From NCBI GenBank assembly GCA_965637545.1, contig OZ281500.1, forward strand, positions 16,616,001 to 16,680,000: a stretch of 64,000 nucleotides of DNA, read 5' to 3'. Shown here piece by piece: positions 22,632 to 56,823 of this stretch (positions within the stretch are counted from its first letter, which is position 1; every line of letters starts with the position of its first letter). Below the pieces are notes generated by a model. That model saw only the letters and a list, made by a program, of their open reading frames with translations. It ran no database searches and was not told where the DNA came from. Source of the stretch: Phallusia mammillata (lineage: Eukaryota). The translations under genes and the position numbers were made by a program.

Positions 22632-22990
22632 TTACATACAGGCATACGATATATTATATGCCGTAACTTTGAGTCCACGATATAAAAATCTCAACAGTCA
22701 CGTATCTACCATGTGTGACTTGTCATTTTTGTCTGTCGAAATCAGCAAAAACCGCAGAGGGTTATGGAAATAACATCAGATACGTAAATAATACCCCTTC
22801 TTGCTGGCGCCTATGCCACAAACGTGACTTGGTGCATTAAAATTTGAATTAGTCTCTACTTTCTAAAATTTAGAAAATTGGAAAAGAAAAGGCCTACAGC
22901 TAAAAAAAAAACTCTTTTTGGAAGCTTGTTCTTTCTTTTATCTTTTTTTTACATATTGTTACCATAATTTTAAATTTCAATTTTATTGTC

Positions 22991-25900: not shown

Positions 25901-27278
25901 ATTCATTTTTGTGTTTATGGTCTGTGATAACATAATAGCGCATATGACACGAGGCATTAAACACGATTCAAATAAATAAAAAGTCCTAGGAAGACATCTA
26001 AACGATGATTTTTATTTGCTTATTGGACCCGAACAAAATAAAAGTTTTCATATTTTCTGGGGTTGGAAATTATAACCTGGATTGGTAAAGAATTTAGATG
26101 CTGGCATTCCCTTTAAGTTGAATGGAACCACGTGATCACCCAATTGCTCTACTTGATTCTGCTTTAAACTGAACACGTATCCATGGTAACCGTCAGCGTG
26201 GCGCTCTGTAGCGCCATCTTTCGCATGTTCAGCCCCTTCGAAGAGATTCTAAACGGATGTGTGCTTTAGTAAATAGATAATTAGCAACATATTTTGGCTT
26301 TTTTCAGTGTTTTGAGTACTATTTACGTCTGTACGTTTTTCACGTAAAAAATATTGCCACAGCTAATTTAGAAAAGAATACAATACAAATTCGGTATTTT
26401 GTAAGATTGGCCAAATTACATGGTCTAAGTCTAATCGGTTCGACTTTAACTTGTGTAGTTCTCGTGGTTTATCAGACTTTGTACAGTTACCTTTTCCGCT
26501 CCACCGAGGAGAATAATAGGTTCAGGTTTATTTTCTTTTGTTATTAAACCAAACTTTTCTTCCATTAGTTTGCCGTCGTTTGCCCGTAGCCTGACCGTGC
26601 CATCCCTGCCAGAATTATAATATGTTCAGTCTATGTAACAAATAATCCACAAAACTAGCGAATCGAGTTCCACATATATATATCTTATTTCATTAACAGG
26701 ATGGTTTTATCCTACTGGCCGATTCAAAGAAAAAAGTACCCTGACGTTTTTCTAGCACACTAATACCACAAAAGTGTCACAAAAAGTTTGTTAAAAAGTT
26801 TCTTGATGACAATATGTTTCTAGCGTACATGCGTAAAATTCTGAAAATAATATGTTAACAGTTATGTTTATAACTGTTAATTAGAAGTATAATCATCACC
26901 TGTATACCTTGGTTGATAAACATTGCTTACATCCAGTGGTCGGCAACCGCCTGTCCGCGGTCCGGTGCCGGTTCGCGAGTAGTTCGTTACCGGACGGGTT
27001 GCCGACCCCTGACTAACATAATAATGCGGAAATACAGTACTAGTCAAGAAACTTCTCACTAACACAGGTGCTACCTTTCTCCTTTACATATCTAGTTTAG
27101 GTTTAGCCTTTAAATTTTAAAGTCCACCAAAAAACAAATACCTCAAGAGCTGTAGGAACAATCTGTTCCAACGACGCAATGTAACAGATGCGTCGCTGTA
27201 AATTGATTTCACCGTTCCCCCGGTGGTTAAAATGAATCGCAGCGTCGTTCCATTTTCGATGAGAAGTTTCATTTTCAT
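22991..27278 (-). pseudogene. 5'-truncated duplicate (copy 2) of the receptor gene, frame intact
   Basis: As copy 3, offset by -4647. Confidence 0.7.
26934..27011. mobile_element. 78-bp hAT-type mini-MITE (array copy 2)
   Basis: Same element as 22287-22364. Confidence 0.7.
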
Positions 27279-27637
27279 TTACATACAGGCATACGATATA
27301 TTATATGCCGTAACTTTGAGTCCACGATATAAAAATCTCAACAGTCACGTATCTACCATGTGTGACTTGTCATTTTTGTCTGTCGAAATCAGCAAAAACC
27401 GCAGAGGGTTATGGAAATAACATCAGATACGTAAATAATACCCCTTCTTGCTGGCGCCTATGCCACAAACGTGACTTGGTGCATTAAAATTTGAATTAGT
27501 CTCTACTTTCTAAAATTTAGAAAATTGGAAAAGAAAAGGCCTACAGCTAAAAAAAAAACTCTTTTTGGAAGCTTGTTCTTTCTTTTATCTTTTTTTTACA
27601 TATTGTTACCATAATTTTAAATTTCAATTTTATTGTC

Positions 27638-30600: not shown

Positions 30601-31925
30601 GCATTAAACACGATTCAAATAAATAAAAAGTCCTAGGAAGACATCTAAACGATGATTTTTATTTGCTTATTGGACCCGAACAAAATAAAAGTTTTCATAT
30701 TTTCTGGGGTTGGAAATTATAACCTGGATTGGTAAAGAATTTAGATGCTGGCATTCCCTTTAAGTTGAATGGAACCACGTGATCACCCAATTGCTCTACT
30801 TGATTCTGCTTTAAACTGAACACGTATCCATGGTAACCGTCAGCGTGGCGCTCTGTAGCGCCATCTTTCGCATGTTCAGCCCCTTCGAAGAGATTCTAAA
30901 CGGATGTGTGCTTTAGTAAATAGATAATTAGCAACATATTTTGGCTTTTTTCAGTGTTTTGAGTACTATTTACGTCTGTACGTTTTTCACGTAAAAAATA
31001 TTGCCACAGCTAATTTAGAAAAGAATACAATACAAATTCGGTATTTTGTAAGATTGGCCAAATTACATGGTCTAAGTCTAATCGGTTCGACTTTAACTTG
31101 TGTAGTTCTCGTGGTTTATCAGACTTTGTACAGTTACCTTTTCCGCTCCACCGAGGAGAATAATAGGTTCAGGTTTATTTTCTTTTGTTATTAAACCAAA
31201 CTTTTCTTCCATTAGTTTGCCGTCGTTTGCCCGTAGCCTGACCGTGCCATCCCTGCCAGAATTATAATATGTTCAGTCTATGTAACAAATAATCCACAAA
31301 ACTAGCGAATCGAGTTCCACATATATATATCTTATTTCATTAACAGGATGGTTTTATCCTACTGGCCGATTCAAAGAAAAAAGTACCCTGACGTTTTTCT
31401 AGCACACTAATACCACAAAAGTGTCACAAAAAGTTTGTTAAAAAGTTTCTTGATGACAATATGTTTCTAGCGTACATGCGTAAAATTCTGAAAATAATAT
31501 GTTAACAGTTATGTTTATAACTGTTAATTAGAAGTATAATCATCACCTGTATACCTTGGCTGATAAACATTGCTTACATCCAGTGGTCGGCAACCGCCTG
31601 TCCGCGGTCCGGTGCCGGTTCGCGAGTAGTTCGTTACCGGACGGGTTGCCGACCCCTGACTAACATAATAATGCGGAAATACAGTACTAGTCAAGAAACT
31701 TCTCACTAACACAGGTGCTACCTTTCTCCTTTACATATCTAGTTTAGGTTTAGCCTTTAAATTTTAAAGTCCACCAAAAAACAAATACCTCAAGAGCTGT
31801 AGGAACAATCTGTTCCAACGACGCAATGTAACAGATGCGTCGCTGTAAATTGATTTCACCGTTCCCCCGGTGGTTAAAATGAATCGCAGCGTCGTTCCAT
31901 TTTCGATGAGAAGTTTCATTTTCAT
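27638..31925 (-). pseudogene. 5'-truncated duplicate (copy 3) of the receptor gene: half LamG - Ig - TM - tail, frame intact
   Basis: Same 8 terminal exons as the intact gene. The first exon is cut at its internal ATG and has lost its splice acceptor. I saw no stop or frameshift in the exons. Coding status unknown. Confidence 0.7.
31581..31658. mobile_element. 78-bp hAT-type mini-MITE (array copy 3)
   Basis: Same element as 22287-22364. Confidence 0.7.
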
Positions 31926-32275
31926 TTACATACAGGCATACGATATATTATATGCCGTAACTTTGAGTCCACGATATAAAAATCTCAACAGTCACGTATC
32001 TACCATGTGTGACTTGTCATTTTTGTCTGTCGAAATCAGCAAAAACCGCAGAGGGTTATGGAAATAACATCAGATACGTAAATAATACCCCTTCTTGCTG
32101 GCGCCTATGCCACAAACGTGACTTGGTGCATTAAAATTTGAATTAGTCTCTACTTTCTAAAATTTAGAAAATTGGAAAAGAAAAGGCCTACAGCTAAAAA
32201 AAAAACTCTTTTTGGAAGCTTGTTCTTTCTTTTATCTTTTTTTTACATATTGTTACCATAATTTTAAATTTCAAT

Positions 32276-32281
32276 TTTATT
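32276..32281 (-). terminator. AATAAA polyadenylation signal just after the receptor stop codon (repeated in each copy, e.g. 18330-18335)
   Basis: Minus strand reads TGA GAC AATAAA, followed by an AT-rich tract. Confidence 0.5.
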
Positions 32282-32284
32282 GTC

Positions 32285-35200
32285 TCAATAAAATGAATTA
32301 TTGTAAGAAAACAGCTTTTCTTCGTACAAGTCTACATCATCGGGTTCCAAGCCGCTGTCACTCAAGCTGCCAATCAGCGAATCAGATGACTCCACGTCAT
32401 CGGTGTCGCTCCACCTTCGTCCTGCACTAACCTCCGGTTGTGTATTTTTGCTTGAGTCTGCTTCAGGTTTCGATTTATGCTTATGACTGGATTTCTTTGA
32501 CCTCCTGCATAATTCAAACAAACTACTCAACTGCAGCATAGCGAGTGGAGAATAAACTGCATAAAATCATGAATAGATACTTCAAAATAGTGCTGTAAAC
32601 CTAGCAAAAAACGTAAATGACTACTATTCTGTTCATGCTCTAGCTAGGGCAATGCAATTTCAAACTTTGGTTTCTTTAGCAACGAAATGGGGAAAGCTAC
32701 ATATAAAACACAAAGGTGAATATATATCACTAGAGGCTACGGGCTACGCCTGAGTTGTTGCAAAACAAACTTGTGCTTTTTCTTCTTGTGTTTCTTTTTG
32801 TGATGTTGATCACTTTCTTTTGTGTCAACATCGTCTTTCAGCAGTTGCTCTTCTTCATCATTGCTGTCAACATCTTTATTTTTGATCATTGACTTCTTTA
32901 CTTCAACTTTTTTTACATTTTTTCTTCGTTTTCCCTTTTTTCGCATACACCTAAAAAAAACGGGTTTAGCAAAACGTATTAATCACAAATATAAATTTAA
33001 TTCATTTAAAATAAAAACTCAAGTAAGCATAAATGGCTTTATACTTTCCTGTTTAATAAAGATCATTGTTCTGTACAGTTCATGATCATGATCTAAAAAT
33101 CGCTCATTGTACTTTGCCCTATTTAATCAGAGCGTCAAAAACAGATTTAGCCTTAACAATAGTTTTGTACAAAATCAAATAACATAACATAATACCAGCT
33201 ACAGACACTACAAAATGTGATCAGGATTAATAGAAGACAAGCAACTGATCCAACAATGATTAAGATGGCCCCGGTTTCTGTTACACCCGCGGAGTCCCGG
33301 ATGTACGTGATAATGCTATAAACTCCACCTGGGTTGAGAATGTCTGTAAAAAAAAACTAGAATTTTAGAAACCAAAAACTACTAAATATAACTTCGTTGC
33401 AAGTAAACATATATGACCTGCACCGTTACGTACAAGTATTAGCAAGAAACTATGTTTAGAATTATTTAAAAATGCAATGTATATTCCTTGTTGCAAGCGA
33501 TAAAATACTAAATGTTATTTGAACAAAGCTCGTAAATCCTGTATACTCAGGTGAGCTACTCCCATAGGCCGTTACAAAACTTTTCTAAATACCGATTGAT
33601 CGGGTAAACTGTAAAGAGTACAGGTATTTATCTTAACCGTGAGACTGGAATTGGGCAAGAATTAAATGTAAGATTGGGGCCTTTATAAGTTGGGTTTATT
33701 TTTTAATGTAAAACCTTACCCATACCCTAATAGCCCTAACCGTCATGATTTGCTTTTAAATACTCAAAAATATTCACCTATCGGCATTTAGCAAACTTTA
33801 TCTCTAGTGAGTTTATAAGTTAAAAGAAATATAGAATTTCCGTTATCACGAGGAAAAACACAATTAAAAATGTTTTGGTTTAAATTTACTTTTACAGTCA
33901 CATCGCCACACATCGAAAAGCATCTCAAAATTGGGACCAAATAGCAGGAGCCAGTTGTCCAATGCTTGACTCAACACAAAAAGCACTTACTACCATTGAG
34001 CACAGAAACCACGTGATTGATCAGCAACCAATGGGATAGGCCTTCCGATATAACGCATGAGTAAACACCAGACAGATCTCTGCTGCCCTGCGCAGTTGGT
34101 ATGAGGAAAAGCCGACTTCTTATATACGTGGAAGTGTATTCGATACGGTGTCGAAAAAAGGGATGCCCCTTCAGCTAAACAATGAAAAAAACGTAAAAAC
34201 TCAAATCAGTTTGCGAATTACGGGTAGGTGGCGCAAAGAGCATTAACTAATATTTTTAAGCAAAGTTGTGTGAGTTAGCTGACGATTGGAGTTGGGGTGA
34301 GGTTTGATAATAGAAATGACATTAAAACTAACTTAGTTCTTAACCTTTAATTCAGTTCCTTATTCTTTACCCCTTCTGTCGGAATTTCGCTAACTTTTGT
34401 GGTTTAAGTCCCACGTTAATAGCACTAATTGCAATAAACGTGGTATAAAATGCATTTGTTCCTGCAGTAATATTCTATGGTTTCGTGTATTGTTTGGTGT
34501 AAAAATCCTAGCGATACTTTTTTAGAAACATTAAAACTAAAAAAAACTTTTTCCTAACCAGTAAAGAGAAAATCAAAACGCACGCTTCGATCTACAGTAC
34601 ACGAATGGTCAATATTTCATTCCACATAAGTAATAGTTACAAAAATACATGTTCTTTGCTTTACTGTGCTACGTTTTTATACAAGTAAAAAACGTTACCT
34701 CTACGTCATCCTTGTACCACGTGATATTTGGTGACTCCGTTACGTCATAAGAGATCGGTACAAGGCAAAAAAGTTCACGAAACTCATCACGTTTAGCTGT
34801 ACTTTTGTTCCCCAAAACATCTCTGTCGAAGCTGAAATCTCCTTCGCCCTTGTAGGTGGGTTTGAAGTACCAAGACTTCCACGTGACTGCATGGATACAA
34901 AATTTTGTTTTCAATTGTTGCAAGAACCATTTTTACTTTTACGCCTAAAATATGTAGGATTATGATGGTCCTTTGCCCGAAAATAATGGTTCCCTTGACT
35001 GAACATTCCTATCTGGCCCAAAGTGGAAAGATGTGTACGCAACTGGTTGTTGTGGGGCATGAAACAGGCTCAAAAAATGTCAAACACACCTCTTATAAAA
35101 TATGCGACCCGTAAGAACTTTCACGCGACTAAAGTTTGAATCACGACGTATAATTTGGCAAAAAAACTGAGCTAAAGAACAACATTTAAATAGTACATTC

Positions 35201-38200
35201 ATTTTTGTGTTTATGCTCTGTGATAACATAATAGCGCATAAGACACGAGGTATTAAATACGATTCAAATAAATTTCAAATAAAAGTTCTAGGAAGACATC
35301 TAAACGATGATTGTTATTTAGCGGAAATAAAGGAAGTTTATTTGCTTATTGGACCCGAACAAAATAAAAGTTTACATATTTCTGGGGTTGGGAATTATAA
35401 CCTGGATTGGTGAAGAATTTAGATGCTGGCATTCCCTTTAAGTTGAATGGAACCACGTGATCATCCAACTTCTCTACTTGATTCTGCTTTAAACTGAACA
35501 CGTATCCATGGTAACCGTCAGCGTGGCGCTCTGTAGCGCCATCTTTCGCATGTTCAGCCCCTTCGAAGAGATTCTAAACGGATGTGTGCTTTAGTAAATA
35601 GATAATTAGCAACATATTTTGGCTTTTTTCAGTGTTTTGAGTACTATTTACGTCTGTACGTTTTTCACGTAAAAAATATTGCCACAGCTAATTTAGAAAA
35701 GAATACAATACAAATTCGGTATTTTGTAAGATTGGCCAAATTACATGGTCTAAGACTAAGTCTAATCGGTTCGACTTTAACTTGTGTAGTTCTCGTGGTT
35801 TATCAGATTTTGTACAGTTACCTTTTCCGCTCCACCGAGGAGAATAATAGGTTCAGGTTTATTTTCTTTTGTTATTAAACCAAACTTTTCTTCCATTAGT
35901 TTGCCGTCGTTTGCCCGTAGCCTGACCGTGCCATCCCTGCCAGAATTATAATATGTTCAGTCTATGTAACAAATAATCCACAAAACTAGCGAATCGAGTT
36001 CCACATATATATATCTTATTTCATTAACAGGATGGTTTTATCCTACTGGCCGATTCAAAGAAAAAAGTACCCTGACGTTTTTCTAGCACACTAATACCAC
36101 AAAAGTGTCACAAAAAGTTTGTTAAAAAGTTTCTTGATGACAATATGTTTCTAGCGTACATGCGTAAAATTCTGAAAATAATATGTTAACAGTTATGTTT
36201 ATAACTGTTAATTAGAAGTATAATCATCACCTGTATACCTTGGCTGATAAACATTGCTTACATCCAGTGGTTGGCAACCGCCTGTCCGCGGTCCGGTGCC
36301 GGTTCGCGAGTAGTTCGTTACCGGACGGGTTGCCGACCCCTGACTAACATAATAATGCGGAAATACAGTACTAGTCAAGAAACTTCTCACCAACACAGGT
36401 GCTACCTTTCTCCTTTACATATCTAGTTTAGGTTTAGCCTTTAAATTTTAAAGTCCACCAAAAAACAAATACCTCAAGAGCTGTAGGAACAATCTGTTCC
36501 AACGACGCAATGTAACAGATGCGTCGCTGTAAATTGATTTCACCGTTCCCCCGGTGGTTAAAATGAATCGCAGCGTCGTTCCATTTTCGATGAGAAGTTT
36601 CATGTGTGATGCTAAGTTGTGCTCACCTGCACAAAACAAAAAATAACATTTGGAGAGCGTCAACTCGATTCAAATCGACCTAATTTCCTAGATATTTATG
36701 CATTTCGCACCACAGTAACTATCAGAAGGATTTAAATGGAGAAAAGGCATTGAAGTTTAAACAAGATACTGTGACTATTTTAATGTTTCATTAAATTGAT
36801 GTGTCATTATACCTCGAGCATGTTTAACAGATGCTAAATTCCTAATTGTATGACGTCAGTTGGAAACAAAGTGACATTGACCTCTGATAAAGAAGATAAT
36901 TCCATCTCCTACTGTTGGCTTGAAAATCATTTCAAGGGTAGCTACGTCACGACGATCGACGTCACTGGCTGACATGACGTCGCCGGGATCGTAGACCTCA
37001 CCAGGGTTGCTCCACCACACCATGGAAAGAGGAAATCGCATTCTAGATTGTAAAATAATAAAAAGTGTAAAATGTGCTTTAAAATAGTGATTTCAGGGAT
37101 TTCATGGAGTACTTTTTTAAAATGTAAACAACAACATTAATTTTGAAAATTAAAATAATAATAAATAATAAAAAAACTGTTTGTTTTTCAAGACCATCGC
37201 CAATTCAAAAAATAATGCATTTTTTGTACTGAATCCCAGGGGCGTATCCAGAAATTTTTAAAGGGGGGGGTCCAACAATGTTTTTGGGGGAAATCCCCAA
37301 TGACGTCACACGTCGTTCAAAACGACGCGTTATGCGGCAAAGCACTTTTTCCAAAATTGGCGGTTTCTCTACCCATCTAATTGACAGGAAGAACAGGTAA
37401 TTTTAGCAAAAGCTTTGTAGTTTTCTGATTTCGCCGCTGCTATCTAGCTTACTCAGCCAAACTGCAACTGCAAAATAAGCGTGACTGTCAGGTAATCAAA
37501 ATCGTTGCTTAAAAAAACAGGGTCCAATTTCTAAAGAACTAAATCTCTTGCTGAAGCGGTAATCCTACTGTTAAGTTGCGCAAAGTCACGAATGCACTAA
37601 AGGTGGTAACTGCAGAAGGCATAAATTGTGCCTGGCAAGTAACAAATTACCCTAATAACATAACTCGATTTACATCGATCTAATGTTTTTGACAAACTAT
37701 TACGTGTTTGGCGGATCAAAGCAACACAACATTACACGTTTTCAACACTTTTACATTGTTCAAATGCAAAAACAGTTTGATATGTTGCACTTAGTGCAGT
37801 TACCATTTAGCAAGAAACTGCTATCAGCGTCCTAGCCGGAACGTAACTTTCCGATTGTTAGCGCATAAACCTCCTTATTAAACCCTTGTTACGTCACAAT
37901 TGGCGATTAGATAACAAGCGAATACAAGAGATTGAAGGCTCACGTCTTTGAGATAACGACTCCCTGTTATCACGCAGTGGTAAACGGAACGATTTTGGCC
38001 TATTTAATTTACGCACAACTTTTTGAAAAGGGGGGGGGGGGGGGTCCGGACCCCCAAACCCCCCCCTTGGATACGCCACTGCTGAATCCCAACTCTTCAT
38101 GTGCATTATTGCCCCAAGGCCCACTTGGAAAATTAACTGCTTTGAAACTACACTTGATTTCAAAATTGATTTTTGCGGCAAATCATTAAAGTGTTGGTAT

Positions 38201-41200
38201 AAGGTTTACTGTAAAAATCTGGTACTGTTAAAAATGTCTCAACACCTTTGACGACCGTCGAAATAAGGAATAAACGCTTCATCGTGTCTTTGTTCTTGAG
38301 TAACTTTTAAATATTCCACTCCCTTACTTGCCATTGGATCGTTGAGTTGCGAATGTTTCGACAAACTGCGCTTCTTCAAGTTAAACTCTTGGAAGTTTAC
38401 TTGTAATTTTGATACGTAACCTGAACGAAAAAAGCGTTTTTCTCGAAGACAAAAGTCTTAAATCTTGATAGAATTACGTTTATTGGCTAGTAGCAATAGA
38501 CTGTTACAGTAAAAAATTACAGACCAATAAACAGATTTAATAAAAAAATCTGTTATCAATAAACAAAAATAGTTCAATTAACAGGCATGCAAATAATGTT
38601 TTGCGTTTAACGTAAGTATCATAGTATCAAATTGTATTACTGTCACACACTACGGTTTAAGTTTGACATTTGTTACAGGAACGTTCAGTTTCTTTATACG
38701 TGCTCCTACCTCTAAAACCGATATCCTGTTTTCGGACTTTCCCCAAACCGATACTTCCTTTGGGTCTTAACAAAATCGCTCTTGTAGTTTTGAGTAAGGA
38801 GTCAGCTTTGTAAGAACCCAACCAAGTTTTGGTGCTATCTACATAATCCAAAACATTCCCCCACAAGCTTGTGTTGGTGACGTTAGTGGTGGGGGCGGGA
38901 GTGGGGTCAGGGGTAGTTTTGGGGTCGGCCCGAAAAACTGCCGCCATGTTGACGTCATCGTTTACTCGGACATTCATGACGTCACTGACAATGGTGATGC
39001 GAAATGTGTTCCAACTGGCAAGCTGTAAATGACGTCATACTACAGTGAAAACGTAATATCACACCCTATCATGTATAAGCAACGTAATTTTTTTGGAGGT
39101 CAGTTTTGAGTAAAAAATGTTTGGTCACATGACGTCAGATTAGTGACGATAAGGTGTGATATCACATTTGCTACCTCACAACTTACGCGAACTTTGCCCA
39201 CTTGCATCGAAATTACATCTGAACCGTTGAGCGACGCCGTCACCATCACGTGACCGCTCTCGCCCAATGAGACGCGCACAAACTCGTGACTTGCTTTTCG
39301 TTCCGCTTTACTGCGCGTTTTTGAGTTGATTTTGACGTTTAAAGGTGGAGGAGTTGATCCTACAGCGTCATGAGGAACCCCCGTAAATGTAAGGATTGTG
39401 CCGATGAATGAGATTGGTTTAAAGCGGAGGAAGATTGAAAGGATGGAAGACGCCTCCTGGGGTCGAAAGAGGAGCACACTGTGTTCCAGAAGATGTGCGA
39501 TCACGCCTTGATAATTATCTGCGAAATATTAAAATAAACAAGCGTCACATTAAAAATACAGTCACATTACTCATTTTAATTATTCTTAGTTGTTTTGTAC
39601 AGTGGAATATTTTGCAAATATGTATGTCTAATTTCTTTACACAGTCTAAAACATCAGGCGTTTTGTGCCACAAACATCAGCAAAAAACACAACTTATACT
39701 ACTATCATAAAAACAGGAAATTATAACTTCACTAACTTCGACAAGGAAGGCCTTGACAAGCCGAAAATTCAGATGAAGGTCCAGGACACTTTTTCCCCAA
39801 ACCATCTGGTGATGGTCGTGTGCAATCTCTCAATCTTATTCTCATTCCACCTCCACATGTGCTTACCATACATCGTGACCACGGTTCCCATATGTCAGCC
39901 CAACCGCCATTTTCTTTAATAAAAATAAAACGGAATAAAAATCATTACACTTTGGTTTTTTAAACGTGTCAAAATAGGTATTTTTTCATTTACTTTTCAT
40001 TTCTATATAAACGCGCTTGTTTTCACTTGTGCATTACATTTTACACTGATGATGACAATAGTTTTGTCGAAACGTTTGTTTTAATAAAAATGAATACGTT
40101 TTACTCTACGTCGCTGGCAATTTGCTTTTTATTAAAGCTTTTCTAAAAGATTTTTAAAAAACTATATTTTTTTCAACTACCTTAACGTTGGAACGTTGTT
40201 ATTTTAAAACTAAAGCTTGGCTTAGGGCCGTACGCTAGGCCCACCCAAAATTACCATGTGACAAGGCATAAAAGACAAGCAGATCGTCATATCAGCAATT
40301 GTGGTCAAACTATCATGAACATGTTTTAAAAAATGGAATCAGTTCTAAAGCCTTACTGCTGTTTAGCAACAACGACTTATATATAAACCATCATACGACT
40401 GTTTCAAGAGATTTACCAATAGAAGATCCTTTGTACCTACTGTATATAAAGGTACCAGGACCAATTACTGCAAATTTTGCAAACCCCTTTAGGACTGCTT
40501 CCTTATACGTTTAAATTGCGTATTACACACAATGTATAAATATTATGAAGGATTCAAACACTTTAAAACATGTTTTTAGGGGGCAGACAAACAAAATTAT
40601 GAGGTCCCGAATGCAGACAACGCTCCAATGCACACCAAATTTTCAGTTCCAAATACACGTGTTTGTGACATCACAATGATCGTTCGAAGAAATATCTTCT
40701 ACAAAAATAGTCATACACCGTGTGTGGAATATAGCACGCGCGTTTAATCCCCGCAAATTTTTGTCTTTGATCCTAACAAGCGCTGTACAAGTGTATTAGA
40801 CCGCAGCTTACACCTTCAATTGTCAGATCAACTATAGTCGGATAACTACGTACGCGCTCATCCGACGTTTATTACGAAGAGGTGGTCTTTGTTGTGGTAG
40901 AAACGTACGCTTTAACATGGTCATACTAATGTGTATATTTTTAGAGCAACATCCATGTTGGTGCATTATGCGTTTTGATTACTCCAAATCAGGAGTCGGC
41001 AACTACTGGCACGCGTGCCATAAGGTTGGCACGCGAGGTGGTTTTTCATGGCACGCCAGTCGATTTGCGTGTTTATATTGAAGTAACAATTTAACCTGTT
41101 ACACTGTTTGTTTTCAGTTTTTTTTATCATGCATTGTCTTAAATTCAGCCTTACATGCACAAAACACTCTGCTTCCTCTTTATTATTGATATCTGCTGGC

Positions 41201-44200
41201 ACGAACCACTATTATCTAGAAAAGATGTTGGCACGCGAAGTCATTGGCACATGGAAATAACAGGTAAGTTGGCACGAGTCGCCTAAAAGGTTGACGACCG
41301 CTCCTCTAAGAGTCTAAATAATCAGTTTTTCGAGAAGAAAATGATATTAGTCAATGAGTTGCGATCAAATGTAAAACCTGTTTGTGGGCCTTTTTCTACA
41401 AAATTTATATAAATGATTCGGAGTGTGTGAAGTAAAAGAATAACCTCGGTACTACGTGACAATATTTAAAAAAAATTAAATTCATTTATATGTGTTTTTA
41501 AACAATTTTTTTGCTGTATAATGAAAACCTGACTTTGAATCTAAGCCTATACAACCCAATATAATTGATCTTACAATTAACAATAGAAATATATAAAATA
41601 AATATTTGTATCTGTCGCAAGGTGTCTCACGTGAGCATGGCGGAACATCCGTGCATCCTCTTTGTTGTTTTTCGGATCCAACACAATACGCAGCTGTGTG
41701 GAATGGCAAACAGTCACGAGTTCGTGTAACCCGACCTGCTTGTCCGCATGGTTCGTCACAGGCACTCCATGCTCCCCACTGCCCCCAAGTGTGTGGCTTT
41801 ATAAGCGGTTCCGCTGTAACACAACAGGATTATACAGTGTAAAAGCATATGAGCCAATAAATGATAAGCTGCAGACAGTGCCGTTTGATGGCTAAACTAG
41901 CCAATGCGGCCGATCTCTCGTCACCAGCTGCACTGATGAGACCTTATAGGTCGAAACAGTGTGCACTGTCTGCAGCTTAGGATTATACAGTTTATTACAA
42001 ATTGGACGGTTGGTTGTATGGTATATAATTTTCGCGTAGAAACCGAAAACAGTAAATTGTGCTCTCTGGTAATAATATAATGATTTACTCAGCAAAATAG
42101 CGCACAGAGACACAAAAAAATATCTATGCGTTAGAAAATCTAAGTCCATGTACAAAAACATGCACATAGTTTAAAATGACTCCATAAATGTGAATTACAG
42201 CTTCATGAATGACTCAGCATCTAATGAACGCAGTTTTCAAGCTAATATGCAAAAAGATTTGAGAGCAGTGCCACATATTTTAAATCAACGATGACTTCAA
42301 CTTTATACCAAACCTTTACTTAACTAGTAGCCCTGAAAGTTTTGAATTAGCGCCACACAACGAATAGATTTTTTTAACAATCAAGATCAAATTAAGATGG
42401 TTTCATGCACCACCACATTTTATCACCAAAAATGATTAATTCGCGGCACCCTTGGCAATCTCCCACTGCACACCATGGTGCAGCGGCAGAGTGGTTTGAA
42501 AGACTGGAGTAGTTGTGTAAGATACAAGTTACACATAACATCCACATATACGGGGATTACACGCAAATTAATGTTTCATAACCACATCATGAAGAAGATA
42601 ATTATCAGTTTCAGGCACTTGACAATAAGGAGAGACGACAGCATCCAGAAAATACATACAAGCTTAAAGGCACGTATCACAACCGCACACACGCATGGAT
42701 GTGGATGCTAACAGCTTTAATCAAGTGCAACCGGGCCATGTGGTTTTAGCCAAGTCTAAGGTCAAGTTCGTGTTGATTATGGATATATTCTACTATGGTG
42801 GTCTTTTATATATTGCCTCTATTAATGTTCTTGAAAGTAAGTTGTAGGTATTTCGTGAGATTTAAATTGACTTGGCGTGGATAGATCATCGTTTGCGATT
42901 TGGCAAGACGTATGTAGACCAATTTAAATACAAGAATATCAGAATTTTTTCTCACAGCACATAAAGTGATGTAATAAATATTCAAATTGTTAAGTCTTCT
43001 GTGAGCAGGTATTACAACAATGTTAACATAAAACGAACCAAATAATAAGCAATCAGGTAAGATTTTATGTCACCGATAAATAAAAATGTTTATTATCTCT
43101 AATAACAAAAACAATTGTAAAATATTTGTGTGTGGAAGTATTGGGCCCTAGTAAACGGCAATTGATTGACAGCTCAAGTTAAGTGGACCAGCTGTTGTAG
43201 GCAAGGTTTAAACCTACATTAGCACGTACCGAAGCATTCCATTTCGATCGTTCTGTTGCACTTGCGCACTTCAGAGAACTTTCCATCACACTGGCTTCCC
43301 CAGTACTTTGGCGGCCTGCATCCTCTCCACCGAACCTGCTCCCCGGCGCCGCATGTGGCGGAACAAGGTTGCCACTCAAGCCAGGGTAGCCATTCAGCCC
43401 TATCTAAAAGTGGCAATGATGTGACATTGTTTATCGTTCAAGTGGCGCCGTATTTTGGGTAATTATACCATTGCAACGGACGCTGTACTTTACGCAGTTG
43501 AGCAAACTCCAATAGACGCTCTAAAATGACAAAAAATCTTTGGATTAGTGGTGTTTAATAAGAGAGTTCCTGACAATGGAGTTGTAAAACGCAAAGACAG
43601 GGCACGGTCTTAAAGTGCCTTCGATGACAGTAACTATATGTTGGTGTATTGATGGATCTGTACTGTGACGTAAATTGGTGCTTTTTGAAAAGTTGTAAAT
43701 ACATGTTGTCATAACATGACGTATACACTTGTTTCTATAAGTTCCTCCATATAAACATACATTGTAAGAAGAAGACATACAACTAATTGCGGATAAGCCA
43801 CACGGATTTATGACACGACCAAATTGTTGAACTTGGAATTCCAAACATGGAAAATGTTCGTGCTTGTACAAGTATCGTCTGATATTTGCATTGTTGACTC
43901 ACGACTTTTGACTTTGCATAGGTCAAGTGGATAACGATGACGCAGCTGTGACGTAAAACACCACGGACATGGAAGTGTCGCGCGATTTGTCAATTTAAAG
44001 CTTTGCGTTTCTGCGTTACGAGGCTAATTAAAATACCAACCTCAATGTACAGTGATACATTAATTTATTTTGTCTTGGCACAATGAGCCGTGATTTTAAG
44101 AACACGTACCGTAAAATAGGGAATTCGGTAGAAAAGATTTAAAACAATCGTAACTTCAAAAATTCAATTAAGTGCGTGTGGTCAAACGCAAAATAGTCGT

Positions 44201-46747
44201 TGCCCAAATGATTTCAAAACACACCATATACCGTTAGCTTGGTAAGTTAGTTTTAAACACTTTTATATTCGGGTTTTTTCACAATCTCCGAATGATTGTA
44301 AAAATAATCCCGCCTATTTTGCCCGGCAAATTTTATAGAAATATTATCTAACTGAATGCTTTGCTTGTAGTTCAAAAATTTCATACGTTGTTAAGCACCA
44401 TGTGAATGGAGGTATTTGTTCGCACTAGAAACGAATGTTGATTTCCAAAACAAGCAGTTGAACCAGTCAAGTGGCTCCGCACGTGGGTTGCTTATGGTGA
44501 GTGTTTCATCTGTTGTGTGCAAACAGGTTTGCCGCCTCCACATGACATTTAAGGGGGGTGCACGATTCTATGGCTCCCTGCATCACTGAACATGCTTTTT
44601 GAGTAAATTAATGGAAAGGATTAAATTAAGGTCCCGTGAGGACAAACATAAATCTCATTGGATGAACTTAAACGTTTGCTGCTTCGTGCAATTTTCAAGA
44701 TTTTGACCAAAATAATAAAAAATGTATTTTCGTCTCCCACCCCTTGTTGAGTTCGCCAATAATAGATGAATCATTTTAAACTTCTGGCGTTTGTCAAATT
44801 TCGTGGAAAGCATGTACGTAATTTGACAGTTTTGTTTTTCTTCGTGTATTTGTGTTAACAGTCGGCTACTGTGAAATAATATAATTGTAAAGCGTTGAAT
44901 AAAATAAAAGTTAAAGTACAGCAGCAGTTATCTTTGACTATCGGTATATTGGTTTTGTGATATTTTTAAGGTTAACACAGGGTATACATTTCATGTGTAT
45001 CATTAGTTTGATCTTTTTTGGCTCTATTACAACTTCTATCATTATCAAAGGTAGTCCGCAAGCTTTTGCTCTTGACCCGACTTTACCGACCACCAAGCAC
45101 GTACAAACGTTAGCTTCATGTCACAACACAGCACTATTATCGTTGAAAATCCGGAAACCCTATAACGTTACGCCGGTACACAAAACTTAAGCGCATGGGT
45201 TAAGCGTGAGCGGCAGGTTTCAACAGCACCGATAAAAACAACTTCAAAAAAACCTTAAAATAAAGCAAACGCTACCGTGTTCGGTTCCCCGCACGCACAT
45301 GGGCATTGGAACAGAGCAATTTTGCAGGGATGGCGTGATCAGCGATCCATATACGCCACTCAGAATCAATTAGACACGTAACTATGGGTAACGGACAGGG
45401 TTCAGTGCGCTATCAGCAACTTGTCTTGCTAACGAGGCAAGTGAATGCCAAGGTGACGACCCTGGAACAATGCTAAAGCGTTCTGTTTCAAAACAAGGCT
45501 TTGCGATTGGCCACTATAACACTTACCCTGCGGTCGCGGGGTTACTCGAGGTCATCCCACCGCGATGCGATGGATTGACGGTTTAAATTCCTCAGCGTTT
45601 TGTTTTGTTTCGCAGAGGAAAAACGAGAATGTTTTTGCGTGAACTTTAACCTTTTCCTTGCGAGAAATGTTTTTGTGCATATGTCAGCAATATTGACTGT
45701 CATGTTATGTCACTGCGCAAGAATCACAATCAATCATATTTCTTGATGCATGTTAACGGAAAAGATCCTGAGAACGTTTGGGTTCATAAATGCGTGTGGC
45801 CTACTTTTTTAGCGGCTTAAACTGGCAACAGCAGCATTCGCTTCTACAACAGTAACGGGTGTCAATCGGCATTTTGACAACGGCATTAACGTACCGTTTC
45901 TTCTAGGTCTCCAATAATTGCATGAGCATCGTCGAATTTGCATTGGTGAGTGAAACACTGTCGCTCCAATTCCGGTGAAGAGGCCATATGAAACCGCTGG
46001 AGGGCGCGATCCGCACGTTGGTTCGTGGTCAGATCCTCCAGGTCAGCTGCAACGACTGCAACAGAAAAATTACATAGACATAAGTGGAAATAAAAGAGGC
46101 AAATATATATGCCCCATCACTTCATTTGGTGATAAAATAAATCGTTCAGCATCTGGACCTATAAGGCTAAAAATTTAGTCACTAACAGAACTGACACAGC
46201 GAGTTATTTACTCCATACGGATTAAGTTAAACAAACAACAATCTATCACAAACGGGTACTTTGGTAGAGCATATATATAACCTTACAGTTTAAGGTTCCC
46301 AAGCCAAACGAGCACTTTATTCCGCAGAGCACGTTTGAGGTAAAACTAAGAAAAAATTCTTCCGGTCGAAGCTTAAACTTGAGCCTATAACGAAGATAAA
46401 GCGCTGTGCAATTGTTTTACGTTTTGCGGCTGATTTGTGCAAACTTTCTGCCCCAGTCGAGAGTCAAATAACCGAGTTTTACCCAAACCGCACCAAGCAA
46501 GGTTATCCTGTCGAGCTTAGACAAATGAACCATAGAAAAATGTGCAAGAATGGTCTGGTGCTGGTGCTGGGTTTCAGTGTTCTCATTTCAACACAAATGC
46601 TAGGTTGCTTGCTTGCTATTTACCTTCATCAACAATGCTGCGTTTGGTAATTCGTCTTTCAAATGCCCGCCCACTTGCAGTCGAGAAAACGATGACGCAG
46701 CATAATCCAATAAGCTGAGTTATAGAGATGGATCGATGGTGATGCAT
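32285..46747 (-). CDS. Type I membrane protein: signal peptide - degenerate Gla - 3x TSP1 - 2x laminin G - Ig - TM - basic/acidic tail, 18 coding exons, about 1067 aa
   Basis: Exons (minus): 46747-46624 (MHHHRSISITQLIGLCCVIVFSTASG signal, RITKR), 46055-45895 (LERQCFTHQCKFDDAHAIIGDLEET), 43945-43903, 43403-43230 (WLPWLEWQPCSATCGAG), 41813-41631 (WGQWGAWSACDEPCG), 39913-39737 (WEPWSRCMVSTCGGGMRIRLRDC), 39518-39187, 39022-38710, 38420-38246, 37042-36882, 36626-36473, 35936-35822 (IILLGG), 35573-35402 (GYHGYVFSL), 34886-34699 (LFC...ITWYKD), 34174-33991 (DLSGVYSC), 33343-33196 (TM AILIIVGSVACLLLILITFC), 32950-32771, 32504-32285. All phases match; 3204 nt, open. Donors at 38245, 36881, 35401 and 32770 are GT but weak, so these boundaries are less certain. 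Confidence 0.85.
36265..36342. mobile_element. 78-bp hAT-type mini-MITE (array copy 4)
   Basis: Same element, with one extra TIR mismatch (GTTGGC instead of GTCGGC). Confidence 0.7.
37237..38081. mobile_element. Non-autonomous hAT-type DNA transposon, 845 bp, intronic
   Basis: 14-bp TIRs CAGGGGCGTATCCA / TGGATACGCCACTG (1 mismatch); perfect 8-bp TSD CTGAATCC at 37229-37236 and 38082-38089; subterminal poly-G/poly-C tracts. Confidence 0.9.
39990..40120 (+). mobile_element. Penelope-like element pLTR/3'-end relic
   Basis: TATATAAA, then the hammerhead core, then AATAAA, the usual layout of PLE pseudo-LTRs. No RT or GIY-YIG ORF nearby. Boundaries approximate. Confidence 0.45.
40037..40091 (+). 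ncRNA. Minimal type I hammerhead ribozyme motif (Penelope-like element type)
   Basis: CTGATGA 40046-40052; extra T; stem II GACAA / TTGTC around loop TAGTT; GAAA 40069-40072; palindromic stem III AAACGTTT; triplet GTT; stem I ACA/TGT plus CATTTT/AAAATG. Confidence 0.65.
40990..41304. mobile_element. Degenerate hAT-type MITE with TGGCACG subterminal repeats
   Basis: Left end CAGGAGTCGGCAAC, right end GTTGACGACCGCTC (degenerate TIR); several TGGCACG copies at both ends; TSD only 5 of 8. Confidence 0.55.
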
Positions 46748-49700
46748 CTGGGAAAATGCAGGTTCTTGTCTTTGTTTGGGCAAGAAAACAAGGGTATGTG
46801 GTTTACTTTCCTATAGCGGTCTAGGAACTAAGAAAACAGTTTTTCATAGATCCGTAAACAAAATGGCAAAAAATCCAATAAAACAGCAGAGGATGCTATT
46901 GGTCAATATTTAAACTACCTTCCCTGACCGACAAATCTATTCAAATTTGAGCAAAAATATAAAACAACAGTGGTTTTGTTTGCGGCTATAAGACGGCGTC
47001 TACTGCTTTAAAATGAACAATTTTGATTGGGTCTGGAATTTTGTGTATCATCGTATTTGTGTAGAACGGTTTTACTGTTATGATGCTGCGGAAGTGTTAT
47101 TTTCATTCTGTACAGAACGTTTAACATAAATAGGCAAGTAAAAATTGTTTTTATTAATTTTTTTACAGACAGTCGAACGCTTGTTTTAGGAACGGATACA
47201 AGTTTTGAAACATACAAATTTCACACTTACACAACAAGCATTTGTCAATGCAAACCAAATAAGGTCGCACAGAATAATCAACATCTGAAATACGTTAGGC
47301 TAAAGTATTGGTCAGGAGCCAGAACCACCCCTTAATAACAGTCACTCCAAAGCCATTGTCAGTCATCGCGTAACAACGAACTGTCACAATGACAATTGTC
47401 ATGTAGAATGTTTTTCTAACCAGAAATAGTTCAGGCACAGCTATACTTGGGTTCCGACACTTAGGGGTCTAATCCTGATAAAGGAGAATGAATTCGTTTA
47501 AATACAAACGTGTCGCTCAAAGGGGTCAATGTTGTTGCAGTTAGGAGATTGTGGCGCTTAGGGCAACGTATAAATATTGCTTTAGACGTCGCGGGGTTAT
47601 AGTTTGTGCGCCTTAGTAGCAAAATAAACAGGGTTGAAAAAATCTAGCGTGCGGCGATAACGTACTAATAAATCAAGATTAGTGAGAGAATTCATGAATA
47701 GGCTTGACAAGAAAACAGAGTCAATTGATATTTGTCCTAAATTCCGAGTCTTTTTTTGACATCGTGGTTAAGAATGGCCTCGGGAGATTAAATGCCTTCT
47801 GAATTACACCTTATTGGTGCAACGAGTGTTTATTTGGTGCGAGCGGCTTGTGGAAAGCTAGAGCGTTTTGACAACAACCAGATAAAATTAAGCTGACAAA
47901 TAGATTGGGTTTGGTTGTTTTGGTATTCCCATAAGACCACCTGCGTGTCTGTTAATTAATCATCGCTAAAACAGAAGGTTATTTCCCTGTCATTTTGGTT
48001 TTACAGTACACAAATACAACAAAAGATTTTTCGGAATGCTACCAAAACTACACTGGTTAAATTTAAAACGTTTATTTTGCAGAACTCGACTACAAGTTAT
48101 ACAAATCATTTAACAAAAGATTATGCATCAAAAGCATTCTTCGGGCTTAAAAGTTATACATAAAAAAATGTCCTGGTCAAAATTTCTTGCTAAACAGTGG
48201 AGTGAAACAAGCAATGGCTTACCCTGCTTTCTAGGTTTGTAAATCTGAACCTAGCAGTCACTTTATCATTGCTCTTATTATACAGCTAGTTAACTCTGTA
48301 ACTACAAACTTGTAAAGGTGTAAAGATAAGCAACCCGTAACCAGCACTTTTTACTTCTTATCTTTTCTAACAGCATTCAAATATTATCCCATGAGGTAAG
48401 TGAAAATCGCAAATTTGTTACATTAACGCTTTATAAATAAGTTTATTAGCACTGATTGTTGTTTTGCCCATCAATAATTTGTACATGAATGTGCAGCGTC
48501 AAATGTAAGTTACGTCACATTTAAGCACTTGCTCAAAATATGGCTACGTGCAGTTCCAGAAGGTAAGTTTACAAAAAAATGCACATGCACATTCCTAGTG
48601 AAGTAATTGCACGGAGAAGCCAAACCCTAATGCGTTTGTAATTTCAAAACTTCGTCTTGTTTGCCTTGAAAATGCCACCCAGTTATGTAATGGGGTCGTG
48701 CGAAACATTTCGACAACAGTTTCAAGTTCTGGCCGTTTTCGCAAACTTGCAACTAAAAGAACACAAAACTGCTTTTACCCTATCTCCCTGCGCCGGAGGT
48801 CCCGACTGCACTGTTGACAGAGGTTACGGTTAAATTAGCAAGCGGATTTGGTTCTCCAAAGTTAGTGAACTGTTGACTGCCTGACAGTGCGTCTAGCTGA
48901 CTGCCAAATAACTGCCCGCCACAAAAATATTTCACCACGTCATTTTGACTCCTCACTTGTACTCATGTACGACTGTTCGTTTCTTAACTTAAAATAGAAC
49001 AACACATCTCATATGCAGTTAGCCGCACTAACAGGTAGACCAGCAATTACTCTGTCTTTAGGCTAAGGCGCCCATTGTCATGTTGTATGTGTTTGTTTTG
49101 TAACAATTACAGATTGTCTTGTTTATTGTAAATATATATTTACATGTAGCTTGGTGCCCCATTTCATATTTCAATTTATGTAAACCTATATAGCATGATA
49201 TAACTGCTTAAGTATTTTTTGTAATTTTGTATTCAACTTGGTGTTTTTGACTTCTGGCTTTACTTGCGGAACCTAAAGTCGCACCAACAGTTCAATTATT
49301 TCAGGATTTTTATTAAAAGAGACGCAACAGCTAACCTAAAAAATGCGGAAACGTGAAAAAATACAATAAGAAATGTGCAGAACGCCTTAAATCAAACAAC
49401 ACACAACAAAAAATCAGAAAATTGACAAGCCACAAGGAACTTTGCACTGGTCGAGTGCCGGCTTTGTCGGTAATGTTTTCATGGAAAACGTCGTGCAGAG
49501 CAAAATATGTGCACAAGAAAATAAAGATTGTCAAACTAAAATCCGAACGTTTTGCATACCGGTGATTTTCTATGCAAGCTACTGGTGTCAAAGACATCTA
49601 TGAGTGTTTGTGTGTGGCAATCAGAATAGCTGCAAAAATTGGCAATTGCAAATCTACCGTGTAACATGCGAAAGACAAGTGTGATGTGATTTAATTTAAC

Positions 49701-55900: not shown

Positions 55901-56823
55901 TTTAGCGAGTAGTTTAGTCTGCAAGGTAGCAAGGAACGGGCTCGGTTGTCTGGAAACAGGTTTTCTTTTTAGATTTTACCGGTTTAAGAAGAGTGACAGT
56001 TGCCAGGCAACTTTATACACGCCTGGGATATAAACACATCAAAACCGGTTGCGGAAATCAGTCTGTATTAACAAGGGATTTTTCAGCTCAGGGTTTACTT
56101 CTTTCACCGTATTGTGGAATGGCATAGTGAAACAATTTTAGCAATACTTTGCCAATCCCTATAGTCTTACATTTGGATCCGTTTTCGGTCCTAAACTATG
56201 CTATAGAAGTCCAAGAACAATAAAAAGAAAACAAATGTCTTACCGATAGTGTTCATGACTTGAATCTTTCCATCCTGGTCATCGTAGATCACCACTGCGC
56301 TTGCTTGGTATCTCTCTCCAAGCTTGATCTTGTTGAAGAAATAGCACCTGCCTCGCTTGATCAACGCAATCCACGGCTCGTCCCTGGGAATTTCCATTTC
56401 ATTTTTAATCGAATGTGCGCAGCCTAAATTCGACGACCTTCCGGGATCGGCGACATGGACCACTTTGCCTCGGACCATCTCAGTAGGCGAGTGAAACCCA
56501 AACTTTCCAGTGGTACGCAGTTTTATTTCGTCGGACGCATCAGGTGTCATATGTGCATGCAAGTGAGCGTCGGTCCATGCTGGGGGATTATTAGGATCTG
56601 GTACAGTTTCAGTGGCGACTGATGGTGATTTTCGCATAAGAGCATCAAGAAAAATCTTGTCATTCACTGGATCGCGCTGGTCTCGTCGCTTTCCGCCGCG
56701 TCCCCGGTGCCGCCTTTTGCGTTTGCGGGCTTCCGTGCATGAATTTTCGGCGCACACTACAAGGATGATCACGATCGACCAGCTGATGAAACGGACGATA
56801 TTGAGCAAATTCAAAGTAGTCAT
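49950..56823 (-). CDS. Goliath/GRAIL (RNF130/RNF149/RNF150-family) PA-domain protein lacking the RING; Thr-rich stalk and hydrophobic C-terminus; 2 exons, about 326 aa
   Basis: Exon 1 56823-56244: signal peptide, then PA motif GCAHS...PWIALIKRGRCYFFNKIKLGERYQASAVVIYD, ending at a phase-1 GTAAG donor. Exon 2 50350-49950 follows acceptor TTTTTATGTTCAG and completes the PA domain (GTHTISLMVSLDFGKKLAALADSGTATYLTIEVG), then a Thr-rich tract, GSGS, ILLLFTLAIIAIV and a stop. 981 nt, open. Confidence 0.85.
52933..53132. promoter_or_regulatory. E-box (CLEAR-like) pair plus palindromic CRE; candidate intronic enhancer or promoter
   Basis: GGTCACGTGACC 52933-52944; TCACGTGACCAAAG directly repeated at 52935 and 52951; TGTGACGTCACA 53121-53132; locally CpG-rich. 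Confidence 0.4.
55925..56011. promoter_or_regulatory. Cluster of RFX X-box motifs in intron 1 of the PA-domain gene
   Basis: GTTGCCAGGCAAC (55999-56011, perfect inverted half-sites), GTTGTCTGGAAAC (55945-55957) and a weaker GTAGCAAGGAAC near 55926. Confidence 0.5.

What the first reader, a model, noticed from the sequence alone, without database searches (positions are those of the whole stretch)
43903..46055. A Gla domain that has lost almost all its carboxylatable glutamates
Seen: DLTTNQRADRALQRFHMASSPELERQCFTHQCKFDDAHAIIGDLEET, then LRHRYPLDLC. Known consensus: propeptide F(-16), A(-10), L(-6), R(-4), then ANxxLEExxxGNLERECxEExCxxEEAREvFEDxxxT, with a phase-1 to phase-0 exon ending at Thr followed by a tiny phase 0-1 exon (YFYPKYL-C in PROS1/GAS6). 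Retained here: L/A/L/R spacing, LER, the C-x4-C loop, the terminal T, both intron phases and a 43-nt YP..LC exon. Lost: about 7 residues including the omega-loop EE; E16 is Q, E19/E20 are TH, E25/E26 are DD. Inference: a Ca2+/vitamin K-independent Gla fold, or a carboxylase-binding propeptide with almost no substrate.
Basis: partly seen in the sequence, partly recalled or inferred. Interest (0 to 1): 0.8.

Follow-up and report, generated by a model that had tools for sequence, protein, structure and literature searches.

The report
Sea-squirt Gla domain without its glutamates
A transcribed sea-squirt gene starts with a small module that is most likely a relative of the vitamin K-dependent 'Gla' domain of blood-clotting proteins, but in two species it has lost nearly all the glutamates that vitamin K chemistry acts on, so it probably folds and works without vitamin K or calcium.

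Summary
The main observation holds. Exon 45895-46055 (minus strand) is real, and spliced transcript contigs from four runs of one study use exactly these borders.

Transcripts use a 52-nt exon at 43469-43520 instead. It encodes a Y-W-x-x-L helix and a C-x6-C loop.

- **Sequence tests.** With the true exon joined, Pfam Gla is the only family hit, at E=0.009 (16.6 bits, below the 27-bit cut-off). Of 37 PDB hits, 36 are Gla-domain proteins, best E=0.001, in gapless register over Gla residues 10-42.
- **Retained.** L13, E14, the C17-x4-C22 loop, F24, A27, the Y40-W41 dipeptide, the phase 1/0/1 introns and the position behind the signal peptide.
- **Lost.** Only 1-2 of about 11 carboxylation positions are still Glu.
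- **Second species.** A second ascidian, found in host DNA within JGI metagenomes, has the same gene, the same exons and the same Glu-poor module. Non-synonymous change there is no higher than in the neighbouring TSP1 repeat.

Homology is likely (about 0.85). Independence from vitamin K and calcium is inferred, not shown. The fold could not be tested. The claimed 7-residue deletion and the retained propeptide remain open. I class it as a new variant of a known domain, of moderate interest.

The parts
46624..46827 (-). Exon 1: 5' UTR, ATG at 46747, signal peptide, then a short basic stretch ending ...RRITKR|SIVDE. The CDS part is 124 nt and ends in phase 1.
   Evidence: Transcript contigs cover 46624-46827 and join 46624 to 46055 in 4 runs. 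Sequence read. The candidate exon 1 of the second species ends ...ARSPR|SLVEP with the same phase.
45895..46055 (-). Exon 2 (161 nt, phase 1 to 0): a propeptide-like stretch plus the Gla-like core up to the Thr that aligns with Gla residue 37. It holds L13, E14, R15, the C17-x4-C22 loop, F24 and A27.
   Evidence: Spliced contigs use exactly these borders. PDB phmmer on this exon alone: all 12 hits at E<=10 are Gla domains. ESM-atlas: the top 3 clusters are PF00594. Orthologous exon: L002 10011-10183.
43469..43520 (-). Exon 3 (52 nt, phase 0 to 1): the true partner exon. It carries Y40-W41-x-x-L44 (the aromatic helix of Gla domains) followed by a short C-x6-C loop.
   Evidence: Joints 43520 to 45895 and 43403 to 43469 in all 4 runs. 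Sequence. Adding it improves the PDB E-value from 0.33 to 0.0011 and produces the Pfam Gla hit. The orthologous exon, L002 13260-13311, is also 52 nt, with YWSLLNCVK identical.
43903..43945 (-). It is a decoy inside intron 2 and is not part of the mRNA.
   Evidence: Zero depth and no joint in 4 runs. No match in the second species.
43230..43403 (-). Exon 4: thrombospondin type 1 repeat 1.
   Evidence: Pfam TSP_1 E=5e-11. Transcript contigs. 54% identical in the ortholog.
41631..41813 (-). Exon 5: thrombospondin type 1 repeat 2.
   Evidence: Pfam TSP_1 E=2e-5. Transcript contigs. 48% identical in the ortholog.
39735..39941 (-). Open stretch holding thrombospondin type 1 repeat 3. Exon borders were not confirmed by RNA here.
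   Evidence: Pfam TSP_1 E=1.7e-11. 55% identical in the ortholog.

Best explanation
This is the N-terminal module of a secreted or membrane protein of a sea squirt. The order is signal peptide, Gla-like module, short disulfide loop, three TSP1 repeats, then further conserved exons. The module descends from a vitamin K-dependent Gla domain. It keeps the part of that domain that does not need calcium to fold: the helix around L13-E14, the C17-C22 disulfide loop, the F24/A27 helix and the Y40-W41 aromatic helix. It has replaced almost every glutamate that would be gamma-carboxylated and would bind calcium. It therefore most likely acts as a small, disulfide-stabilised helical cap or interaction module. 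It would need neither vitamin K nor calcium and would not bind phospholipid the way clotting-factor Gla domains do. Shown here: transcription and splicing, the sequence similarity and its register, the intron positions and phases, the Glu substitutions, and conservation in a second species. Inferred: the fold, the absence of carboxylation, and the role.
For: Four runs give spliced contigs joining 46624|46055, 45895|43520, 43469|43403 and 43230|41813. Exon 2 alone against PDB: all 12 hits are Gla domains, E 0.3-0.8. A two-species profile gives best E=0.038, with 19 of 21 hits Gla proteins. The second species alone gives a top 5 that is all Gla. With the RNA-defined exon 3 added, Pfam PF00594 is the only family of 24736 hit, at E=0.0087. 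PDB best is E=0.0011 (factor X Gla), with 36 of 37 hits Gla proteins, as a single gapless stretch matching Gla residues 10-42. Exon 3 played no part in the original match, so its Y-W at exactly positions 40-41 is an out-of-sample success. PMC9669250 names the two Cys and the F/YW dipeptide as the most conserved non-Glu Gla positions, and gives 9-13 Glu as normal. ESM-atlas features put three PF00594 clusters on top (0.88, 185 of 256 shared). As a control, another exon of the same gene gets only scattered, unrelated hits. In the ortholog the exon sizes and phases are the same (52-nt exon 3) and the Gla positions are again non-Glu. pN is 0.25-0.28, against 0.30 in TSP1 repeat 1, with synonymous sites saturated.
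Against: The Pfam score is below the family's curated cut-off (16.6 against 27 bits), and exon 2 alone gives no Pfam hit. No similarity is detectable for Gla residues 1-11, the omega loop. The AlphaFold model of exon 2 alone is poor (pLDDT 55) and finds nothing in the PDB. The spliced peptide could not be folded. The second species' exon 2 gets no usable atlas hit. Only two species are available, so the direction of change (loss of Glu rather than never gained) is an argument from parsimony. Three Glu (12, 14, 36) are conserved and could still be carboxylated.
Confidence: 0.6

Rival explanations
1. It is a minimal but still vitamin K-dependent module. An uncleaved propeptide-like docking motif (hydrophobic residue, then A-x3-L) presents the conserved P-E-L-E pair, and perhaps E36, to the carboxylase. 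The domain would then carry 2-3 Gla residues as a small calcium site or a switch.
For: PMC12647623 names -16, -10 and -6 among the carboxylase contacts. By my count on the aligned sequences, the invariant L-E of PELE lies 11-12 residues after that Leu, the same spacing as Leu(-6) to Leu6-Glu7 in factor IX. E12, E14 and E36 are conserved in both species.
Against: HMMER's own alignment to the factor X propeptide-Gla peptide is gapless and places the motif differently. In that register positions -16, -10 and -6 are V, D and N. There is no basic cleavage site after the motif, and the RADR of the window is LAHQ in the other species. A conserved A-x3-L may simply mark an amphipathic helix. Whether this genome encodes a carboxylase was not checked.
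Confidence: 0.25
2. It is a chance or convergent resemblance: a small helical, disulfide-containing peptide unrelated to Gla domains.
For: All scores are below curated family thresholds. There is no structural confirmation. The exhaustive phmmer of exon 2 against 1.84 billion proteins found no Gla protein at E<=0.001.
Against: The hits are essentially exclusive to one family in two libraries and for two divergent species. The RNA-defined next exon supplies Y-W at the predicted spacing. Intron positions and phases match those I recall for vertebrate Gla genes. The N-terminal position and the chordate host fit.
Confidence: 0.1
3. It is a sister lineage of the Gla domain that never acquired the full set of carboxylated glutamates. 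The Glu-poor state would then be ancestral rather than a loss.
For: Only two sequences exist, and both are Glu-poor. Nothing here polarises the change.
Against: From memory (Kulman et al. 2006, not readable here), Ciona has canonical, carboxylated Gla proteins, so the full domain predates the tunicate-vertebrate split. The retained E14, D25 and the L-E-R-x-C context look like remnants of the canonical motif.
Confidence: 0.05

Closest known systems
Gla domains of vertebrate vitamin K-dependent clotting factors (factor X, VII, IX, protein C, prothrombin; Pfam PF00594)
   Same: Gapless match to Gla residues 10-42: L13, E14, R15, C17-x4-C22, F24, A27, hydrophobic 30/31, T37, Y40-W41. It lies N-terminal, directly behind a signal peptide and a basic stretch. 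The introns are phase 1 before the pro+Gla exon and phase 0 after residue 37, and a short aromatic-helix exon ends in phase 1 (the vertebrate gene structure is from memory).
   Different: Carboxylation positions 6, 7, 16, 19, 20, 25, 26, 29, 32 and 39 are H, M, Q, T, H, D, D, A, G and V here, against 9-13 Glu in true domains (PMC9669250). There is no detectable omega loop. It scores below the Pfam cut-off. It is followed by TSP1 repeats rather than EGF or kringle domains.
Metal-free factor IX Gla domain (PDB 1cfh)
   Same: 1cfh is the top or near-top PDB hit. From memory, without calcium only the part from about residue 12 to 47 (disulfide loop plus helices) is ordered. That is exactly the part conserved here, so it is a good model of how a Glu-less Gla module could still fold.
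   Different: Factor IX needs carboxylation and calcium to order residues 1-11 and bind membranes. Here that machinery is absent by sequence.
GAS6 / protein S
   Same: An N-terminal Gla-type module is followed at once by a disulfide-closed loop that starts about residue 46-47 (vertebrate sequence from memory).
   Different: The loop here is only C-x6-C. TSP1 repeats replace the EGF domains. The laminin-G pair proposed for the downstream exons got no support in any test here. The protein appears membrane-anchored, based on a predicted TM stretch around 33156-33356 seen in the open frames and not confirmed by RNA here.
Ciona Gla proteins Ci-Gla1 to Ci-Gla4 and Halocynthia Gla-RTK (Kulman et al. 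2006, from memory; paper not held)
   Same: They are tunicate proteins with N-terminal Gla modules fused to non-coagulation domains.
   Different: As I recall, those have a full set of Glu and at least one is carboxylated. None is described with TSP1 repeats. No Ciona sequence was retrieved here for a direct comparison.

Membership tests
Gla domain (Pfam PF00594) | Profile score at or above the curated gathering cut-off (27 bits) | tested here: not met
   16.6 bits, E=0.0087, the only Pfam family hit, profile positions 8-38 of 41. Exon 2 alone gives no hit.
Gla domain (Pfam PF00594) | C17-x4-C22 disulfide loop in the L-E-R-x-C context | tested here: met
   The window has LERQC-x4-C and the second species has LEQKC-x4-C, aligned in register to FX, FVII and FIX. 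The disulfide itself is inferred.
Gla domain (Pfam PF00594) | Aromatic F/Y-W dipeptide of the C-terminal helix, 19 residues after C22 | tested here: met
   Y-W in the RNA-defined exon 3 at exactly that spacing, identical in the second species. PMC9669250 calls it the most conserved non-Glu feature together with the two Cys.
Gla domain (Pfam PF00594) | Nine to thirteen Glu at the carboxylation positions | tested here: not met
   Only position 14 is Glu in both species, plus position 35 in the window alone. The other positions are H/H, M/A, Q/K, T/M, H/N, D/D, D/Q, A/R, G/G, V/A.
Gla domain (Pfam PF00594) | Propeptide with -16 Phe, -10 Ala, -6 Leu and an R-x-K/R-R cleavage site at -1 | tested here: inconclusive
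Two registers are possible. The gapless one gives RADR|A but V, D, N at -16, -10, -6, and the site is not conserved.
Gla domain (Pfam PF00594) | Gene structure: phase-1 intron before the pro+Gla exon, phase-0 intron after residue 37/38, and a short helix exon ending in phase 1 | tested here: met
   Junctions come from spliced contigs. The phases are the same in the second species. The vertebrate reference structure is from memory.
Gla domain (Pfam PF00594) | Gla-type three-dimensional fold | tested here: inconclusive
   AlphaFold on exon 2 alone gave pLDDT 55, and Foldseek found 0 PDB hits.
Gla domain (Pfam PF00594) | Gamma-carboxylation, calcium binding and phospholipid binding | not testable with these tools
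   This needs protein chemistry.
Thrombospondin type 1 repeat (PF00090) | Profile score above the cut-off (21.6 bits) | tested here: met
   43, 25.1 and 44.6 bits for the three repeats.
GAS6 / protein S family | Gla, then EGF repeats, then two laminin-G domains | tested here: not met
   There are no EGF domains. TSP1 repeats take their place. The downstream conserved exons give no laminin-G hit in Pfam, PDB or the atlas when tested one exon at a time. Single exons are a weak test.

The most novel reading that the evidence does not exclude
A naturally Glu-less Gla fold, kept under selection across ascidians. It would still dock the gamma-carboxylase through an uncleaved propeptide-like A-x3-L motif and would offer only the conserved E-L-E pair as substrate. 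That would make it a one-site, vitamin K-controlled switch on a TSP1-repeat receptor, and a living intermediate for how Gla domains are gained or lost.
Probability: 0.2. Interest if true: 0.75.

Novelty: new variant of a known kind. Interest (0 to 1): 0.5.

Why it matters
Gla domains are defined by their carboxylated glutamates and are thought to need calcium to take their working shape. A conserved, expressed relative that keeps the disulfide loop and aromatic helix but not the glutamates would have three consequences:

- It would show that the helical core can serve on its own.
- It would give a natural test case for what vitamin K chemistry adds to the fold.
- It would add a new domain combination (Gla-like plus TSP1 repeats) to the few Gla proteins known outside vertebrates.

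It is also a practical warning. Profile cut-offs tuned on Glu-rich domains miss such relatives.

Tried and rejected
- **Pfam on exon 2 alone.** No hit at E<=10.
- **Exhaustive phmmer of exon 2 against 1.84 billion representatives.** One true relative (P0002) and one spurious repeat protein (P0001), and no Gla protein at E<=0.001.
- **Word-index search with the two-species profile.** Only P0002.
- **Metagenome DNA pattern for YWSLLNCVK[YF].** Only further contigs of the same second species.
- **AlphaFold of exon 2 alone.** Low confidence, and Foldseek found nothing.
- **ESM-atlas on the second species' exon.** No usable hit.
- **Laminin-G reading of the downstream exons.** No support. One PDB 'hit' (E=6e-4) was a summed artefact on designed WD40 repeats.
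- **Kulman et al. 2006.** Not held in the library.
- **Literature search for Glu-less or degenerate Gla domains.** Nothing found.
- **Full exon model of the 3' half.** Abandoned because splice choices were ambiguous without more RNA data.
- **dN/dS.** Not computable because synonymous sites are saturated. Only pN and pS are given.

Full report
**What is in the sequence.** The gene lies on the minus strand. The stretch is bounded by an AG acceptor (exon starts at 46055) and a GT donor (exon ends at 45895).

**Transcripts.** Four runs of one study hold contigs of this organism that skip introns with GT..AG ends on the minus strand. One contig is 3292 nt long. They define these exons:
- exon 1: 46827-46624
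- exon 2: 46055-45895
- exon 3: 43520-43469
- exon 4: 43403-43230
- exon 5: 41813-41631

The 43-nt exon is not used. Depth there is zero in all four runs, and the contigs join 45895 directly to 43520. The real exon 3 is 52 nt, phase 0 to 1, and encodes SVYWSLLNCVKYSVRCN. The runs are labelled RNA only by guess, but spliced contigs can hardly come from genomic DNA. All four belong to one study, so they count as one source.

**N-terminus.** The ATG is at 46747. It is followed by a hydrophobic signal peptide and a basic stretch that ends RRITKR|SIVDE at the end of exon 1.

**Is it a Gla relative?** Evidence from exon 2 alone:
- Pfam gives no hit.
- Against all PDB sequences, every one of the 12 hits at E<=10 is a Gla domain (factors IX, VII, X), in one register, at E 0.3-0.8.
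- Language-model features place three PF00594 clusters on top, at 0.88 with 185 of 256 features shared.
- As a control, a 142-residue exon of the same gene gets three unrelated PDB hits and low, scattered atlas scores.

Evidence once the RNA-defined exon 3 is joined:
- Pfam Gla becomes the only family hit, at E=0.0087 and 16.6 bits. This is below the 27-bit cut-off and covers profile positions 8-38 of 41.
- The best PDB hit rises to E=0.0011 (factor X Gla, 22.4 bits).
- Of 37 PDB hits, 36 are Gla-domain proteins, each as a single gapless stretch covering Gla residues 10-42.

Its Y-W falling exactly on positions 40-41 therefore works as an independent test that was passed. PMC9669250 states that, apart from the glutamates, the two cysteines and the F/YW dipeptide are the most conserved Gla positions, and that true domains carry 9-13 glutamates.

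**A second species.**
- An exhaustive phmmer of exon 2 against 1.84 billion representative proteins found one true relative, P0002, which is an ORF fragment from host contigs in four JGI metagenomes.
- Earlier notes of this scan call the window's genome a sea squirt. I did not verify that.
- The contigs carry the whole gene in the same order: a 173-nt exon 2 (phase 1 to 0), a 52-nt exon 3 (TAYWSLLNCVKFGLFCD), three TSP1 repeats and at least eight further conserved exon cores.
- That species' exon 2 alone also draws only Gla domains as its top five PDB hits.
- A two-species profile improves the exon 2 E-value tenfold to 0.038, with 19 of 21 hits Gla proteins.
- Its atlas search, however, gave nothing usable.
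- A DNA-pattern scan of metagenomes for the conserved exon 3 motif found only the same species again.

**Conservation.** Between the two species, synonymous sites are saturated (pS about 0.9). The non-synonymous proportion is 0.25-0.28 in the Gla-like part, against 0.30 in TSP1 repeat 1. The module is therefore constrained at least as much as a bona fide folded domain. It is not decaying sequence.

**What is kept and what is lost.** Numbering follows factor VII/X. Values are given as window / second species.
- Kept: L13, E14, R15 (Q in the other species), C17, C22, F24, D25, A27, hydrophobic 30/31, G32, T37 at the exon border, Y40, W41, L44.
- Carboxylation positions: 6 H/H, 7 M/A, 14 E/E, 16 Q/K, 19 T/M, 20 H/N, 25 D/D, 26 D/Q, 29 A/R, 32 G/G, 35 E/D, 39 V/A.

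The internal calcium-binding array of a Gla domain cannot form. Residues 1-11 show no profile similarity, although L2, F5, H6, S9 and P11 are identical in the two species.

**The N-terminal register is open.**
- HMMER aligns the region to the factor X propeptide-Gla peptide without a gap. This puts RADR|A on RVTR|A. The exon is as long as I recall the vertebrate pro+Gla exons to be, about 160 nt.
- In that register the carboxylase contacts named in PMC12647623 (-17, -16, -10, -7, -6) are not conserved.
- The RADR site is LAHQ in the other species.
There is no basic cleavage site.
- In that same register, by my count, the invariant L-E of PELE sits at the distance from Leu(-6) that Leu6-Glu7 has in factor IX.
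- I cannot decide between the two registers with two sequences.
- A possible convertase site is conserved elsewhere, at the end of exon 1...KR|SIVDE against ...PR|SLVEP. That finding rests on a predicted exon 1 in the second species.

**Structure.** Exon 2 alone, together with its orthologue, gave a low-confidence all-helical model (pLDDT 55) that found nothing in the PDB. The fold is therefore untested.

**Context.** Three TSP1 repeats follow the module. The downstream conserved exons were read as laminin-G domains by another note of this scan. Tested one exon at a time, they gave no such hit in Pfam, PDB or the atlas. That is a weak test, so a GAS6/protein S-like architecture is not established. 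A hydrophobic stretch around 33156-33356 suggests a membrane anchor.

**Mechanism and rivals.**
- Best reading (0.6): a Gla-derived helical module that has given up the carboxylation and calcium machinery and serves as a structural or binding cap. This reading combines homology, which taken alone I put at about 0.85, with the untested inference that the module needs neither vitamin K nor calcium.
- Main rival (0.25): minimal carboxylation of the conserved E-L-E pair, directed by an uncleaved propeptide-like motif.
- Chance resemblance (0.1).
- A never-carboxylated sister lineage (0.05).

**Novelty.** I found no paper describing a Glu-less Gla domain. The key Ciona paper could not be read. I class this as a new variant of a known domain.

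Noticed in passing
window 22482-36627 (minus strand): The 3' part of the gene occurs in four tandem copies about 4.65 kb apart. Conserved exon cores lie at 36627, 31925, 27278 and 22631, and likewise at 35938, 31254, 26607 and 21960. All match the single-copy exons of the second species equally well.
   Followed up: partly
window 41877-41980: A roughly 100-bp stretch in intron 4 is covered by very many RNA-run contigs (summed depth about 800-1300, against 5-13 for the exons). These contigs run on into unrelated sequence at both ends, so it is probably a highly repeated, transcribed element.
   Followed up: no
window 46624-46670 and L002 9249-9378: The end of exon 1 keeps a basic site followed by S-[IL]-V-[DE] in both species (RRITKR|SIVDE against ARSPR|SLVEP). 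This is a possible convertase cleavage site about 22-26 residues upstream of the Gla-like core.
   Followed up: partly
window 56191-56829 (minus strand): A separate upstream gene whose first exon looks, to my eye, like a signal peptide plus a protease-associated (PA) domain region (ORF). No family test was run here.
   Followed up: no
window 43903-43945 (minus strand): A decoy exon with a good acceptor, a gtgagt donor and the right phases, which reads through in frame. It is neither transcribed nor conserved. It shows how a phase-compatible pseudo-exon can mislead a reader working by eye.
   Followed up: yes
alignment A3 (window 36460-36627 with L005 18528-18701): The profile search gave E=6e-4 to designed WD40 proteins, purely by summing eight matches of 2.7 bits each to identical repeats. 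It is a false positive worth remembering when reading whole-sequence E-values.
   Followed up: yes
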